A DNA stretch of 63,850 nt, the filler included, from Sluysia triapertura (Eukaryota): assembly GCA_046118255.1 (NCBI GenBank). It is 5 parts of 5 records of this genome, joined end to end, with 100 filler letters (N's around TTAATTAATTAA, not from the genome) between each part and the next. Parts side by side here need not be neighbours in the genome. Positions count along the whole stretch, not along the records: positions 1 to 13,030 come from JBJNIA010064745.1; 4 more parts are not named here. One strand, written 5' to 3'. Under the pieces are notes generated by a model, which saw only the letters and a program-made list of their open reading frames with translations, was not told the DNA's origin and searched no databases. Shown here piece by piece: positions 1-31,403 of this stretch (positions within the stretch are counted from its first letter, which is position 1; every line of letters starts with the position of its first letter). A program made the translations under genes and the position numbers.

Positions 1-1653
1 TGGATCAGACTGATTTTACACCTTTCGAGAAAGTTCCACGCTTAGCTTATTTGGAAAGTATGAGCTAATATTATTGTAACAGAAATTACTAAATAAACAT
101 TAAATTATAAATTTAATTTAATTTAAATTTTCCAACAATCCACCATAATTTGCAGTTAATAATTTTATAAAATATTGTTCTCGGTACAGGAAAAATAAGC
201 AATATCCATTGATAGACAAATAAGAATATCAAATAATATCAACATCATGGAGAGAAGTCAGAAACAGGCCTAAAGTGCCATAGAATAATGATAGTGTAAT
301 TGACTATAAAAAACGAAATAGTTAGTCGGAGCTGATATGTCAGTGGTCTTCTCAGTCAAAATGTATACGCAAAACCCCCTACTGGTGACTATCGAAGACC
401 TGAAATACAAGCGCAAGGTACAAATTTCTCCCAACTTTTCTCATTAATGTCAAGTCGCCGAATGATGATTATGAGAAATTTAAGGCGGCCCGAACTTTCA
501 ATATTACGAAATATTCCGACTTGAGAGATATACTCCAAATACAACTTAAATGTCTGGTTTCCCTTGACACGTTTGTCGTTGGAGCACTTGGTTCTTGGGA
601 TCCTGAAAATGATATCCTTCTGATAAAACTAGACTTCCGTTATAACTGGTTTAGCACGCCAGTGTATCAAACTTTCCATTGAACCATCCAATATCCCACA
701 TAAATAATATTGTTGTCATATGTGACTTAAACTTGGTACTTTAATGAGTTTATTTATCCTCTGTTTTGGGAGCTTAATCAATATATCATATGACTACAGA
801 TATTCTCTTTCACATTTTCATTTCCTTTTCTTTCTTCTTTTCATTTTGCATTCAATGGTTTTATATTTTTATTTATTTATTTTTTCCCTTATTTATTTTC
901 CTTTATTCTCATTTCTTTATTTCATCCACTTAATTTTATGTCTGTGATTTATCATTGGTGTGATTGTGATTTAATATCAGACTTATCAATGGCATTCTTA
1001 TAGACCCATAGTTCAACAACAATTATTAACATGTTCCTTATCACCAGCAGTACAAGTGGCAGCAGCAGCACGAAAATCAATTTTTTAAATGGACAATCAC
1101 TATCAGCCTTTTATTTATTTACTTTTATTTATCAGTTTATTTATATTTATTGTTTTTGTTGTACTTGTTTTTGTTGTAAAATAAAGTTTTCAATTCATCG
1201 AAATGCATAACTGTGAAACGAGAGGTGCTGGGTTCGATTCCCAGGCAGTCCATTTTATGTAGTCTAACATAATAAAACAAGCGCATTGAGAAATTAAAAT
1301 ATTGATTGGTGCTATTAAGCGAATTTTATAAAGTTATTTAAGAATATTCGATAGTAAATTCTATGAAAGAATAATAAGTTAATTATTTTGCAGATGAATG
1401 GACATTCCAAATGAATTGTCACGAGATGTCTTTCCCGGGCTGGTTTCGTCAAAACGTTGTTATGTGTCACACGATTCCCCCTGTTCTTTGTCCTAAAACA
1501 GCGAGAATAATAAAACCTGAAACTCATGAAGTATTTCTTTGCAGTTTGCAGCATTATGAGCGTACTGCTTTCGGATTGGATAGATTCAGAATTGCTGTTA
1601 TCTGGTTGGGTAGAATGGGACAAGAAGTTAATTTTCAAGTCAAGTTGGTTTGA
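1..1653 (+). CDS. Last two exons (1-57, 1394-1653) of an unidentified protein-coding gene, 5'-incomplete
   Basis: Frame 3 reads DQTDFTPFEKVPRLAYLE, followed by a GTATGA donor at 58. A TTTTGCAG acceptor ends at 1393. The phase-1 join is in frame and gives ...AYLENEWTFQMNCHEMSFPGWFRQ...VNFQVKLV* (includes ORF 1411..1653). Family not recognised. Confidence 0.7.
256..1269 (+). mobile_element. tRNA-core element copy 1, split into a 5' part (~256-347) and a 3' part (1196-1269) by a retrotransposon insertion
   Basis: 5' leader ACAGGCCTAAAGTGCCATAG...TGACTATAA and A-box GATATGTCAGTGGT end at 347. The sequence resumes at 1196 with CATCGAA...GAGAGGTGCTGGGTTCGATTCCCAGGCAGTCCATTTTATGTAGTCTAACA. Both halves match the intact copies at 2056 and 38726. 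Confidence 0.85.
348..1195 (+). mobile_element. 5'-truncated NeSL/Utopia-like (R2-group, restriction-like endonuclease) non-LTR retrotransposon, family 1
   Basis: Translation gives RRPEIQAQ...(frameshift)LINVKSPNDDYEKFKAARTFNITKYSDLRDILQIQLKCLVSLDTFVVGALGSWDPEND. This has RLE PD..D-x-K-like, KY and VGALGSW motifs and is homologous to ORF 33993..34256. A pyrimidine-rich 3' UTR ends AAAATAAAGTTTTCAATT. Confidence 0.85.
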
Positions 1654-1769: not shown

Positions 1770-1985
1770 ATATATTAATTTATATCTACTACAAAGTAAG
1801 TACTCAAAAGTGCTTAAAATAATATTTCTGAAACAGAAACAACTTTGATTTTTTCTAAAATATTTCATAACCTTCCAGACATTTTCTGGTAGTACTGGTT
1901 GTATATTTTTGAAACATAAACAGTATACAACCTATCACCTAGTTCTTATTATCACTGTGGATTCTGTGACATCAGAAATAGTTCC
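1770..1985 (-). repeat. 3' tail of L2/CR1-type LINE family (reverse copy)
   Basis: Reverse complement of the repeated block ...CAGAATCCACAGTGATAATA...TACCAGAGAATGTC...GTTTCTGTTTCAGAAATATT seen at 5650-5880 and 42700-42960. Confidence 0.75.
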
Positions 1986-2055: not shown

Positions 2056-2216
2056 TGTTGCGGTACAGGCTTAAGGTGCCATAGAATAATGATAATATAA
2101 CTGACTATAATAAAACGAAATTGTAGACTGGCTGATAGGTCAGTGGGTAAAGCATGGAACTGCGCAGCGAGAGGTCAAGTGTTCGATTCCCGGTCAGTCA
2201 ATTTTGTGAGCCCACA
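2056..2216 (+). mobile_element. tRNA-core element copy 2 (uninterrupted)
   Basis: TGTTGCGGTACAGGCTTAAGGTGCCATAG leader; tRNA-like core ~2129-2200 (TAGGTCAGTGG A-box, GTTCGATTCC B-box); ends TTTTGTGAGCCCACA. Confidence 0.85.
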
Positions 2217-2257
2217 TATCAAATACCTTTCTGATGTTGAAATTAATGCTTTACAAA

Positions 2258-2806
2258 AAAGGTGCGCAAACTAGGGGACGAGCCCCCGAATCGAGGCGCT
2301 AAAAATTTTGAAATTGCTAGATTTTACAAAGTTTTGTTTATTCTTTGAATATTTTTTGTTGTTGTTTACCAATTTAAGTAATTCCATCATCTAATTCCAT
2401 AATTTACGTTCATCAAGAATAAAATTTCAAAGCAAATATACTTACAAATTCATAAAGCAATTTTATATGTGTACTAGAGATGTTATGCTATTTAGTATTG
2501 TGATATTTTTTAGCTGTTAATTAAAAATAACGTTAGCAAACCGCTATCACAATCGTGAAATAGCAGCTATTAAATAACATAAGTGAAATATTAACAGACC
2601 TAAAATGGCATTTTTGATATAAAGAATTAAAATTTAATTTTGTTAATTTTTCTTTATTTTTGCTAAAGAATTATAACTGTTGTTGTTCATAATATACATT
2701 TTGTTATTAAAAATGTGTTTAATTTATTTATGAAATTTTTGTTATAGTGGCGTTATGATTTTTTTAATTAGTTGGGGTGCCACTTAAAAAGTTTGCGCAC
2801 GCTTGC
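2258..2806. mobile_element. hAT-like MITE
   Basis: Terminal inverted repeats AAAGGTGCGCAAACT / AGTTTGCGCACGCTTG resemble hAT CAGGGGTGCGCAAAC ends; no coding capacity. Confidence 0.55.
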
Positions 2807-5299: not shown

Positions 5300-5890
5300 T
5301 GACTACTTATATTTAGTAACAAATCTACAGTAATAAAAAATAGTTACAATACCAAAATCAATGAAACAATGTTAATTGTAGGTGATAAGACACACTAGAT
5401 GCGAAGAAAAAGTACGAAATATAGGTTGTTATATGGATTCAAAAATGAACATGGAAGAAAAAATTATTGTTCACTCATTGATAACTAGAAACATAGATTT
5501 TAACAATGGTTTGTTGATTTAATTTCATATAGAAAAGTGAAAAATTACAATTAATAATTAATCAAGCAGCAAAACTAATTCCCCAAGTGGGAAGATCTCA
5601 TATAACAACAAGAATAAAATTCAAAATATCTATTAGAAATAATAAAAAAATTTGGAAACCAAGATGAATATTTCATGGAGATATAATAATAATCTATACA
5701 GAATCCACAGTGATAATACCGTTTGTTTCAAAAAAATATACAACCAAAACTACCAGAGAATGTCAAATTACTGGAAGATTATAAAATATTGAAAAAAAGG
5801 CAAAGTTGTTTCTGTTTCAGAATATTATACTGAATGATTTATTTTAAGCGCATTTGAGTACTTACTTTGCAGTAGGTATCATAATAAATT
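5300..5890 (+). mobile_element. Degenerate L2/CR1-clade LINE, RT C-terminus and 3' UTR
   Basis: IGCYMDSKMNMEE, HSLITRNIDFNNGLL, QLIINQAAKL and RIKFKI motifs; same family at 42530-42960, 43440-43620, 44190-44300 and 58300-58590. Confidence 0.7.
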
Positions 5891-31276: not shown

Positions 31277-31403
31277 TGCTAGGATATGGGCCTAAGGTGC
31301 CATGATGGTAAAATAAAATAAAATTATTAGATGGGGTTGATAGATCAGTGGCAGAGCATCGAACTGCGCAGCAAGAGGTCAGTCCATTTTATGAATTCTA
31401 ACA
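31277..31403 (+). mobile_element. tRNA-core element copy 3 (T-arm deleted)
   Basis: TGCTAG...GGCCTAAGGTGCCAT...GGGGTTGATAGATCAGTGGCAGAGCATCGAACTGCGCAGCAAGAGGTCAGTCCATTTTATGAATTCTAACA. The B-box is lost between two GGTC microhomologies. Confidence 0.85.

What the first reader, a model, noticed from the sequence alone, without database searches (positions are those of the whole stretch)
256..1269. Site-specific NeSL/Utopia-type retrotransposon inserted into a tRNA-core repeat (complete insertion)
Seen: the tRNA-core element is split at CAGTGGT|...|CATCGAA, with an 848-bp RLE-encoding, 5'-truncated non-LTR element between the halves. The uninterrupted site reads CAGTGG(C/T)AGAG^CATCGAAC (31346-31364), so about 4 nt (AGAG) are missing at the 5' junction. 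An independent, diverged copy on another contig (33624) has the same 3' junction, ...GTTTTCAATT|CATCGAA. Known: R2-group RLE elements are often sequence-specific (rDNA, SL RNA, U2 snRNA, some tRNAs). Inference: this family targets the D-arm/anticodon-arm boundary of a tRNA-derived mobile element rather than a functional gene, making it a TE that parasitises another TE, with insertions that separate the A and B boxes.
Basis: partly seen in the sequence, partly recalled or inferred. Interest (0 to 1): 0.88.

Follow-up and report, generated by a model that had tools for sequence, protein, structure and literature searches.

The report
Retrotransposon that targets a tRNA-like repeat
The window holds a dead, 5'-truncated copy of a jumping gene (an R2/NeSL-like retrotransposon) that inserted at one fixed spot inside a short tRNA-like repeat, and hundreds of copies across this genome sit at that same spot, so one mobile element specialised in landing inside another.

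Summary
Window 256-348 and 1196-1269 are the two halves of one ~165-bp tRNA-like interspersed repeat. An intact copy lies at 2056-2209. The halves are separated by ~848 bp (349-1195), the 3' end of a much longer non-LTR retrotransposon (at least 5 kb in the longest copies).

- **3' junction, sampled copies:** 26-27 of 28 copies run straight into the repeat's right half.
- **3' junction, genome-wide:** 156 of 295 exact 3' termini are followed within 0-5 nt by CATYGAA (chance ~0.3). Of these, 70 also carry the repeat-specific trailer.
- **5' junction:** about 11 of 17 visible 5' ends, at different truncation points, have the repeat's left half directly upstream, with 1-40 nt target deletions and microhomology.
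- **Same repeat copy:** left and right halves belong to the same repeat sub-type.
- **Protein domains:** longer copies encode zinc fingers, a Ulp1-like protease, RT and an R2-type CCHC plus restriction-like endonuclease.

Placement among NeSL, R5 and Utopia could not be tested by phylogeny. The target is neither U2 nor SL1. The family is old (75-85% identity) and no intact ORF was seen. I rate it a new variant of a known kind, of moderate interest.

The parts
256..348 (+). Left part of the tRNA-like interspersed repeat: a ~75-nt leader, the acceptor 5' strand and the D-arm with the A-box-like GTCAGTGG. It ends at ...CAGTGGTC.
   Evidence: Aligns to natural repeat copies at positions 13-98 and to the window's intact copy (D3).
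344..348 (+). 5' junction microhomology: TGGTC, shared 4 of 5 with the element's internal TGGGC.
   Evidence: Comparison of window 318-380 with 11 longer copies and with the repeat. BLAST homology to longer copies starts at 344 or 348-349.
349..682 (+). Decayed C-terminal coding remnant of the restriction-like endonuclease domain, from the PD...D-x-K region to the GALGSWDPEND motif and the stop codon. It has frameshifts and stops. The open piece is 404-679.
   Evidence: Three-frame translation. Window 431-679 is 83% identical to residues 88-173 of a better copy. It aligns in A3, whose profile hits the CCHC/RLE domain of solved R2 proteins at E=1.1e-5.
683..1195 (+). 3' untranslated region of the element, ending ...AAAATAAAGTTTTCAATT. 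The family's terminus is (CAATT) once or twice, and the window has it once.
   Evidence: Homologous over its whole length to at least 40 other copies. Terminus tabulated.
1196..1269 (+). Right part of the same repeat copy: a degenerate anticodon region with the 8-nt insertion sub-type, a T-arm with the B box GGTTCGATTCC, the acceptor 3' strand and the trailer ending TCTAACA.
   Evidence: Aligns to repeat positions 103-174 (D4). The 8-nt insertion goes with the GGTC D-loop sub-type seen in the left part.
2056..2209 (+). Uninterrupted copy of the repeat in the same window. The empty target site lies between 2152 and 2153 (AAAG|CATGGAA).
   Evidence: query 2-155 matches many genomic copies.

Best explanation
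Window 349-1195 is a dead, 5'-truncated copy of an old, high-copy non-LTR retrotransposon of the restriction-like-endonuclease (R2-group) type. In longer copies its protein carries N-terminal zinc fingers, a Ulp1-like cysteine protease, a reverse transcriptase, and a C-terminal CCHC knuckle with a PD-(D/E)xK endonuclease. This is the NeSL-like layout.

The family inserts in one orientation at one position of a ~165-bp tRNA-derived, SINE-like repeat. The position is between ...GTGG(G/T)(T/C)AGAG and CATCGAAC..., that is, inside the 3' strand of the D-stem. Each insertion puts the A box on one side and the B box on the other.

What the sequences show directly:
- A fixed 3' junction.
- A terminal (CAATT) repeat, present once or twice.
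- Variable 5' truncation.
- Target deletions of 1 to about 40 nt.
- Microhomology at 5' joints.

What is inferred by homology to R2: the endonuclease nicks the bottom strand at this site. The freed 3'-OH primes reverse transcription from the RNA's 3' end (target-primed reverse transcription). The second strand is cut at or just upstream. Incomplete cDNAs are joined through microhomology.
For: **3' junction**
- 26-27 of 28 aligned copies end ...GTTTTCAATT, with or without one extra pentamer, and then read CATCGAAC... through the repeat's trailer into unrelated DNA.
- Genome-wide there are 295 exact 3'-terminal 19-mers, against 0 for the reversed control.
- Of these, 156 are followed within 0-5 nt by CATYGAA, where about 0.3 is expected by chance (my calculation).
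- 70 of those also have TCTAACA 40-65 nt further on, and every listed match, as far as it is printed, reads as the repeat's right half.

**5' junction**
- About 11 of 17 visible 5' ends, at more than 10 different truncation points, have the repeat's left half directly upstream.

**The two halves were one repeat copy**
- The window's left half has the GGTC D-loop and its right half has the 8-nt insertion. These two features go together in uninterrupted copies.
- Most other insertions pair a CATTTGG/CATGTAG-type left half with a GATCCCC right half, as in an uninterrupted copy in L003.
- Uninterrupted GATCCCC copies are abundant: 437 exact matches.

**Protein domains**
- RVT_1 at 33 bits.
- Peptidase_C48 at 24.4 bits, above the 20.7 cut-off.
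- CCHC, RHN, RPD, IDVK, KY and GALGSWD motifs.
- The A3 profile hits the CCHC/RLE domain of solved R2 proteins at E=1.1e-5.
- The nearest full-length relatives carry Peptidase_C48 and RVT_1, with the RLE-profile match at their C-terminus. One of them, P0002, aligns to solved R2 in both the RT and the RLE domains.
Against: - No RT phylogeny with named NeSL, R5, Utopia, HERO or R2 references could be run, so clade placement rests on architecture.
- The true 5' end of full-length copies is not defined. The three longest copies in hand (L032, L033, L068) show no repeat left half upstream.
- 6 of 17 visible 5' ends lack a recognisable left half.
- No copy with an intact ORF was seen among at least 150 scored, so activity and cleavage specificity are inferred, not shown.
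- Evidence that the repeat itself is a retroposed SINE is only moderate. Flanking repeats of 4 nt or more occur in 26% of copies against 7% of control pairs. ARAGORN calls only 3 aberrant tRNA-like hits in 45 loci.
Confidence: 0.9

Rival explanations
1. The CATCGAA...TCTAACA segment is the element's own 3' tail. It would either be shared with the repeat as in a SINE-LINE partnership or be carried along by 3' transduction, and the element would insert without site specificity.
For: Every copy carries this segment at its 3' end. Right halves next to the element are mostly the GATCCCC variant, whereas my first sample of free repeats was GATTCCC.
Against: - The repeat's left half sits directly upstream of about 11 of 17 5' ends at different truncation points.
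- Left and right halves share sub-types.
- Right halves include several repeat sub-types, including the 8-nt insertion type.
- Uninterrupted GATCCCC repeats are abundant, with 437 exact matches. The first sample was biased by its query.
- The variable (CAATT) repeat lies between the element and the segment, where a LINE terminus is expected.
Confidence: 0.04
2. One or a few ancient insertions into a repeat copy were later multiplied as a composite, by segmental duplication or by remobilisation of the interrupted repeat. Under this view the shared junction reflects common descent, not target choice.
For: The window locus has a 94%-identical duplicate that includes its flank (L002). Some 5' ends coincide or nearly do: the window and L008, and L019, L025 and L016.
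Against: - More than 10 distinct 5' truncation points occur, and the flanks outside the repeat are unrelated.
- Insertions sit in several repeat sub-types.
- The near-coincident 5' ends have different joints, explained by microhomology between the element's TGGGCTTCTCAGTC and the repeat's GCTCAGTGG.
Confidence: 0.04
3. The real target is a functional tRNA gene family, and the repeat copies are hit only because they resemble it.
For: The sequence upstream of the cut (GCTCAGTGGTAGAG) is a generic D-arm shared with real tRNAs. By my own comparison from memory, the acceptor, D and T arms resemble tRNA-Ala or tRNA-Cys. tRNA-gene-specific NeSL relatives are known (PMC4640811).
Against: - All right halves that are preserved carry the repeat-specific trailer (17 or more of the sampled copies; 70 of 156 by exact pattern).
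- The sequence downstream of the cut (CATCGAACTGCGCAG) is repeat-specific and does not form an anticodon stem.
- ARAGORN finds no normal tRNA gene in any element locus.
Confidence: 0.02

Closest known systems
tRNA-gene-specific NeSL-related families: NeSL-1_TV (tRNA-Pro, Trichomonas), LIN15_SM (tRNA-Arg) and LIN25_SM (tRNA-Glu) of the planarian R5/LIN lineage (Kojima and Jurka 2015, PMC4640811)
   Same: They are RLE-type non-LTR elements that insert at a fixed position inside a tRNA-shaped sequence, in one orientation, with a precise 3' junction.
   Different: Those targets are real tRNA genes. The 3' ends printed for the planarian families (...tttttaa|GG..., supplement read) are unrelated to ...GTTTTCAATT. 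Here the target is a dispersed tRNA-derived repeat with a 75-nt leader and its own trailer, present in thousands of copies.
NeSL-1 (nematode SL1 genes) and Utopia-1_TSP (U2 snRNA genes)
   Same: They have the same domain order, with a Ulp1-like cysteine protease N-terminal to the RT and a C-terminal CCHC plus RLE (PMC4640811).
   Different: The target is neither SL1 nor U2. The phylogenetic relationship was not tested. The long copies here carry about 2 kb of extra 5' sequence of unknown function.
YURE (Ciona), which inserts into U2-gene-derived satellite repeats (PMC4640811)
   Same: It is a NeSL-clade element whose target is a repeat derived from a small-RNA gene rather than the gene itself.
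   Different: YURE's preference is described as weak or occasional and its target is a tandem satellite. Here specificity is near-total and the target is an interspersed, SINE-like repeat.
R2 (28S rDNA)
   Same: It shares the CCHC/RLE domain (A3 profile against solved R2 structures, E=1.1e-5). It also shares the TPRT hallmarks: a fixed 3' junction, variable 5' truncation and small target deletions.
   Different: R2 has a different target, lacks the Ulp1-like protease, and has a copy number bounded by rDNA units. This family has hundreds to thousands of copies.
Tx1L, which inserts into the Tx1D DNA transposon in Xenopus (my own knowledge; 'transposons' are listed as known targets in PMC4640811)
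   Same: It is a LINE whose specific target is another mobile element.
   Different: Tx1L uses an APE-type endonuclease and targets a DNA transposon, not a tRNA-derived retroposon-like repeat.

Membership tests
RLE-bearing (R2-group) non-LTR retrotransposons | Reverse transcriptase domain | tested here: met
   RVT_1 scores 33.0 bits (cut-off 29.6) on L022:94-372 and 28.4 bits on L003:277-792. YADD and GVKQG motifs are visible. The domain is absent from the truncated window copy.
RLE-bearing (R2-group) non-LTR retrotransposons | C-terminal CCHC knuckle followed by a PD-(D/E)xK restriction-like endonuclease | tested here: met
   The motifs CRWCG..H..C, RHNK, RRPD, IDVK, KY and GALGSWD are present. 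The A3 profile hits residues 879-1075 of solved R2 (9nl2) at E=1.1e-5. The window copy keeps only the distal part.
RLE-bearing (R2-group) non-LTR retrotransposons | TPRT footprint: a fixed 3' junction in one orientation, with variable 5' truncation | tested here: met
NeSL clade in the broad sense (NeSL, R5/LIN, Utopia, YURE) | RT phylogeny groups the element with NeSL-1, R5 or Utopia | not testable with these tools
   No named reference sequences were available. The nearest relatives found are unnamed metagenomic proteins, a sponge protein and an octocoral protein.
NeSL clade in the broad sense (NeSL, R5/LIN, Utopia, YURE) | Ulp1-like cysteine protease N-terminal to the RT, as reported for nematode NeSL and Utopia-1_TSP | tested here: met
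   Peptidase_C48 scores 24.4 bits (cut-off 20.7) on L033:5009-5272, and the Q..DCG motif follows after one stop codon. The closest full-length relatives P0002, P0014 and P0017 carry PF02902 and PF00078.
NeSL proper | Insertion into spliced-leader (SL1) genes | tested here: not met
   The target is the tRNA-like repeat.
Utopia | Insertion into U2 snRNA genes | tested here: not met
   The flanks are the tRNA-like repeat. There is no U2 match in the window at E<=1.
R2 proper | Insertion into the conserved 28S rDNA site | tested here: not met
   The flanks are the tRNA-like repeat.
tRNA-derived SINE (the target repeat) | tRNA-related region with A and B boxes and a cloverleaf-like acceptor, D and T arms | tested here: inconclusive
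   A-box-like and B-box-like sequences and a pairing acceptor stem are visible. However, ARAGORN calls only 3 aberrant 'tRNA-???' in 45 loci, and Rfam tRNA is not matched in the window. The anticodon stem does not pair.
tRNA-derived SINE (the target repeat) | Dispersed high-copy retroposed copies with target-site duplications | tested here: inconclusive
   There are 2394 first-look candidates. Flanking repeats of 4 nt or more occur in 26% of copies against 7% of mismatched controls. Some copies lie in tandem with an ~85-nt linker.

The most novel reading that the evidence does not exclude
By switching from a small-RNA gene to a tRNA-derived SINE-like repeat present in thousands of copies, an RLE-type site-specific LINE escaped the copy-number ceiling that limits R2- and NeSL-type elements. 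It occupied about 7% of its target sites. The repeat then escaped in turn: its youngest, most uniform sub-type (...GCAGCTAGAGG...) makes up about 30 of the 100 empty sites listed and 0 of 31 occupied ones. The change, 15 nt downstream of the cut, may abolish recognition. That would be a LINE-versus-SINE arms race readable in the sequence.
Probability: 0.15. Interest if true: 0.7.

Novelty: new variant of a known kind. Interest (0 to 1): 0.47.

Why it matters
Site-specific RLE retrotransposons (R2, NeSL, Utopia and their kin) are models for target-primed reverse transcription and are being adapted for safe-harbour gene insertion. How they change targets is an open question. This family shows a protease-bearing NeSL-like element retargeted to a dispersed tRNA-derived repeat, not a gene. 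Its specificity is near-total and its copy number unusually high: 295 exact 3' termini and more than 2400 first-look endonuclease matches. It provides hundreds of independent junctions for studying 3' priming (one or two CAATT units), second-strand cleavage offsets and microhomology-mediated 5' joining. Each insertion also splits the repeat's A and B boxes and so probably silences that copy. The value is limited because the family looks extinct in this genome.

Tried and rejected
- **tRNA and RNA-family scans:** ARAGORN found no tRNA gene in the window. Rfam found no tRNA, U2 or ribozyme match.
- **Single-piece searches:** One RLE piece and one protease piece gave nothing useful against solved structures. 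Only the RLE alignment profile reached R2.
- **Organism identity:**
  - The sequencing-run search returned one coded DNA run and no RNA.
  - A length-limited homologue search with a window ORF found nothing.
  - Literature searches for the repeat's sequence strings found nothing.
  - The host remains an unnamed 619-Mb, 26% GC eukaryote.
- **Targets of the nearest relatives:** Their contigs (L069-L072) show no recognisable RNA gene in the short 3' flanks. One ends in a (TAC)n run.
- **Upstream ORFs:** Those of the relatives show no similarity to the 5' 2 kb of this family or to each other. Pfam finds nothing in that 5' region, including a second Q.N..DCG-like motif.
- **The GATCCCC bias:** I considered that this bias in right halves meant the tail travels with the element. 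I rejected that after finding 437 uninterrupted GATCCCC repeats.
- **Limits on genome access:** I therefore could not fetch full-length 5' ends or the related 709-aa open frame at C253571, and I did not try another route.

Full report
**1. What is in the window**

The piece is contig C64745 of a 619-Mb, 264k-contig eukaryotic assembly, and the window has 26% GC.

Window 264-348 and 1196-1267 align to positions 13-98 and 103-174 of natural copies of a short repeat. An uninterrupted copy of the same repeat lies 1.8 kb away at 2056-2209.

The repeat is abundant, with 2394 first-look candidates. An alignment of 31 copies shows a unit of about 165 bp:
- a ~75-nt leader;
- a tRNA-shaped part with a pairing acceptor stem, a D-arm holding an A-box-like GCTCAGTGG, and a T-arm holding the B box GGTTCGAT(T/C)CC;
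- a trailer ending TCTAACA.

It is not a working tRNA gene. The anticodon stem does not pair. ARAGORN reports only three aberrant 'tRNA-???' calls in 45 loci and none in the window. Rfam tRNA is not matched.

Whether it is a retroposed SINE is only moderately supported. Flanking repeats of 4 nt or more occur in 26% of copies, against 7% of mismatched controls.

**2. The insert is the 3' end of a long element**

A genome search with 348-1195 gave 40 further matches (852 first-look candidates), mostly 75-83% identical, plus one 94%-identical duplicate of the locus.

Homology to the window starts at 344-349 in nearly all of them, because the window copy is truncated there. Upstream, the other copies are homologous to each other.

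The longest copies in hand reach at least 5.2 kb (L032:1078-6298). That 5' region is itself repeated in the genome. The true 5' end is not defined.

**3. What the element encodes**

Open pieces of longer copies show the following:
- C2H2-like zinc fingers (L032:3000-3374; weak Pfam support).
- A Ulp1-like protease. It has an H..D motif and then Q..DCG after one stop codon. Peptidase_C48 scores 24.4 bits against a cut-off of 20.7.
- RT motifs, with RVT_1 at 33 bits.
- A C-terminal CCHC knuckle with the motifs RHN, RPD, IDVK, KY and GALGSWD.

A profile built from nine natural in-frame pieces (A3) hits the CCHC/RLE domain of solved R2 proteins at E=1.1e-5.

In a library of 1.8 billion proteins the same profile finds 478 relatives. 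The best full-length ones carry Peptidase_C48 and RVT_1, with the profile match at their C-terminus. One of them, P0002, aligns to solved R2 in both the RT and the RLE domains.

The window copy keeps only about the last 110 codons of the endonuclease domain, with frameshifts, and the 3' UTR.

None of at least 150 scored genomic copies has an open frame longer than 264 aa. The one exception is a 55%-identical relative with 709 aa at C253571. The family therefore looks extinct.

**4. Site specificity at the 3' junction**

In 28 aligned copies the element ends ...GTAAAATAAAAGTTTTCAATT, with or without one extra pentamer that is usually CAATT. In 26-27 of them the sequence then reads CATCGAAC... 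through the T-arm and the trailer into unrelated DNA.

Genome-wide counts:

| Pattern | Matches | Control or chance |
|---|---|---|
| Exact 3'-terminal 19-mer | 295 | 0 (reversed control) |
| 19-mer followed within 0-5 nt by CATYGAA | 156 | ~0.3 expected from base composition (my calculation) |
| The above plus the trailer heptamer TCTAACA 40-65 nt further on | 70 | 0 (reversed control) |

Every listed match in the last row, as far as it is printed, reads as the repeat's right half. No element locus holds a normal tRNA gene.

**5. The two halves were one repeat copy**

About 11 of 17 visible 5' ends, at more than 10 different truncation points, have the repeat's left half directly upstream. 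The left half ends 1 to about 40 nt short of the cut site.

Sub-types match across the insert:
- The window's left half ends in the GGTC D-loop variant and its right half carries the 8-nt insertion. These two features go together in uninterrupted copies L040b, L058, L064 and L067.
- Most other insertions pair a CATTTGG/CATGTAG-type left half with a GATCCCC right half. An uninterrupted copy in L003 shows the same pairing.

The excess of GATCCCC next to the element had worried me. It is explained by an abundant uninterrupted GATCCCC sub-family, with 437 exact matches.

With the same downstream pattern, occupied sites number 31, which gives roughly 7% occupancy. About 30 of the 100 empty sites listed are a uniform ...GCAGCTAGAGG... 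sub-type, and none of the 31 occupied sites is (my count).

**6. Junction details**

In the window the repeat reads ...CAGTGGTC and resumes at CATCGAA. The matching sub-type reads GGTCAGAG|CAT, so AGAG is lost.

The 5' joint sits in TGGTC (repeat) against TGGGC (element), which is microhomology. L008 is joined through CTCAG, and L009 loses only 1 nt.

There are no target-site duplications. This is the pattern expected for R2-like TPRT with a second-strand cut at or just upstream of the first. The chemistry itself is inferred from homology, not shown here.

**7. Comparison with known systems**

Kojima and Jurka (PMC4640811) report the following:
- a Ulp1-like protease in nematode NeSL and in Utopia-1_TSP;
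- tRNA-gene-specific relatives: NeSL-1_TV for tRNA-Pro, and planarian LIN15_SM and LIN25_SM for tRNA-Arg and tRNA-Glu;
- YURE inserting into U2-derived satellites.

The planarian 3' ends printed in their supplement differ from this family's.

This family works like those elements and has the NeSL-like layout. Its target, however, is a dispersed tRNA-derived repeat, and its copy number is far higher than usual. Clade membership could not be tested for lack of named references. It is not NeSL proper, Utopia or R2, because their defining targets are not met.

**8. Verdict**

I rate it a new variant of a known kind and of moderate interest: an extinct but very informative family.

Limits:
- The host organism is unknown.
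- The 5' end is undefined.
- No more genome letters could be fetched.

Noticed in passing
window 1782-1967 and 5698-5879: Inverted repeats of about 190 bp, in blocks 82-100% complementary, bracket a ~3.7-kb segment that contains the intact tRNA-like repeat copy. This may be a DNA transposon or a foldback element.
   Followed up: no
L002 (G000:C250298:1-1096) against window 1-1104: This is a 94%-identical copy of the window's left flank, the repeat's left half and most of the insert, and it ends at a contig edge. The same insertion has been duplicated, or it is an uncollapsed haplotype.
   Followed up: partly
window 2210-2270; L040 1032-1426; also L039, L045 and L013: Some repeat copies continue into a shared ~85-nt extension (GTGAGCCCACATATCGAATACC...). 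In L040 two repeat units lie in tandem, separated by it. The repeat therefore also exists as a longer or tandem form.
   Followed up: no
G000:C253571:253-579 (-): A related endonuclease domain, 55% identical, lies in an open frame of 709 aa without stops. It is the only long open frame among about 150 matches, so it may belong to a younger sister family.
   Followed up: no
genome-wide pattern lists: A very uniform repeat sub-type...CTGCGCAGCTAGAGGTCCCGGGTTCGATCCCCGG, accounts for about 30 of the 100 empty sites listed and for none of the 31 occupied sites. Either it is younger than the element's activity or it is not recognised.
   Followed up: partly
L032:1078-3000 and L033:2583-4780: The long copies carry about 2 kb of extra 5' sequence, repeated in the genome (382 candidates) and with about 40% GC. 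It holds a second H..D / QSNSYDCG motif reminiscent of a Ulp1 protease, but Pfam finds nothing. Relatives on metagenomic contigs also have unrelated upstream ORFs.
   Followed up: partly
L069 (Logan contig of P0002), 3' end: The closest intact relative ends, about 180 nt after its stop codon, in a (TAC)n run at the contig edge. It may be a microsatellite-targeting relative.
   Followed up: no
window 12920-13030: The contig ends in a long (ATA)n microsatellite. Several repeat copies elsewhere also abut (TAA)n or (TAG)n runs.
   Followed up: no
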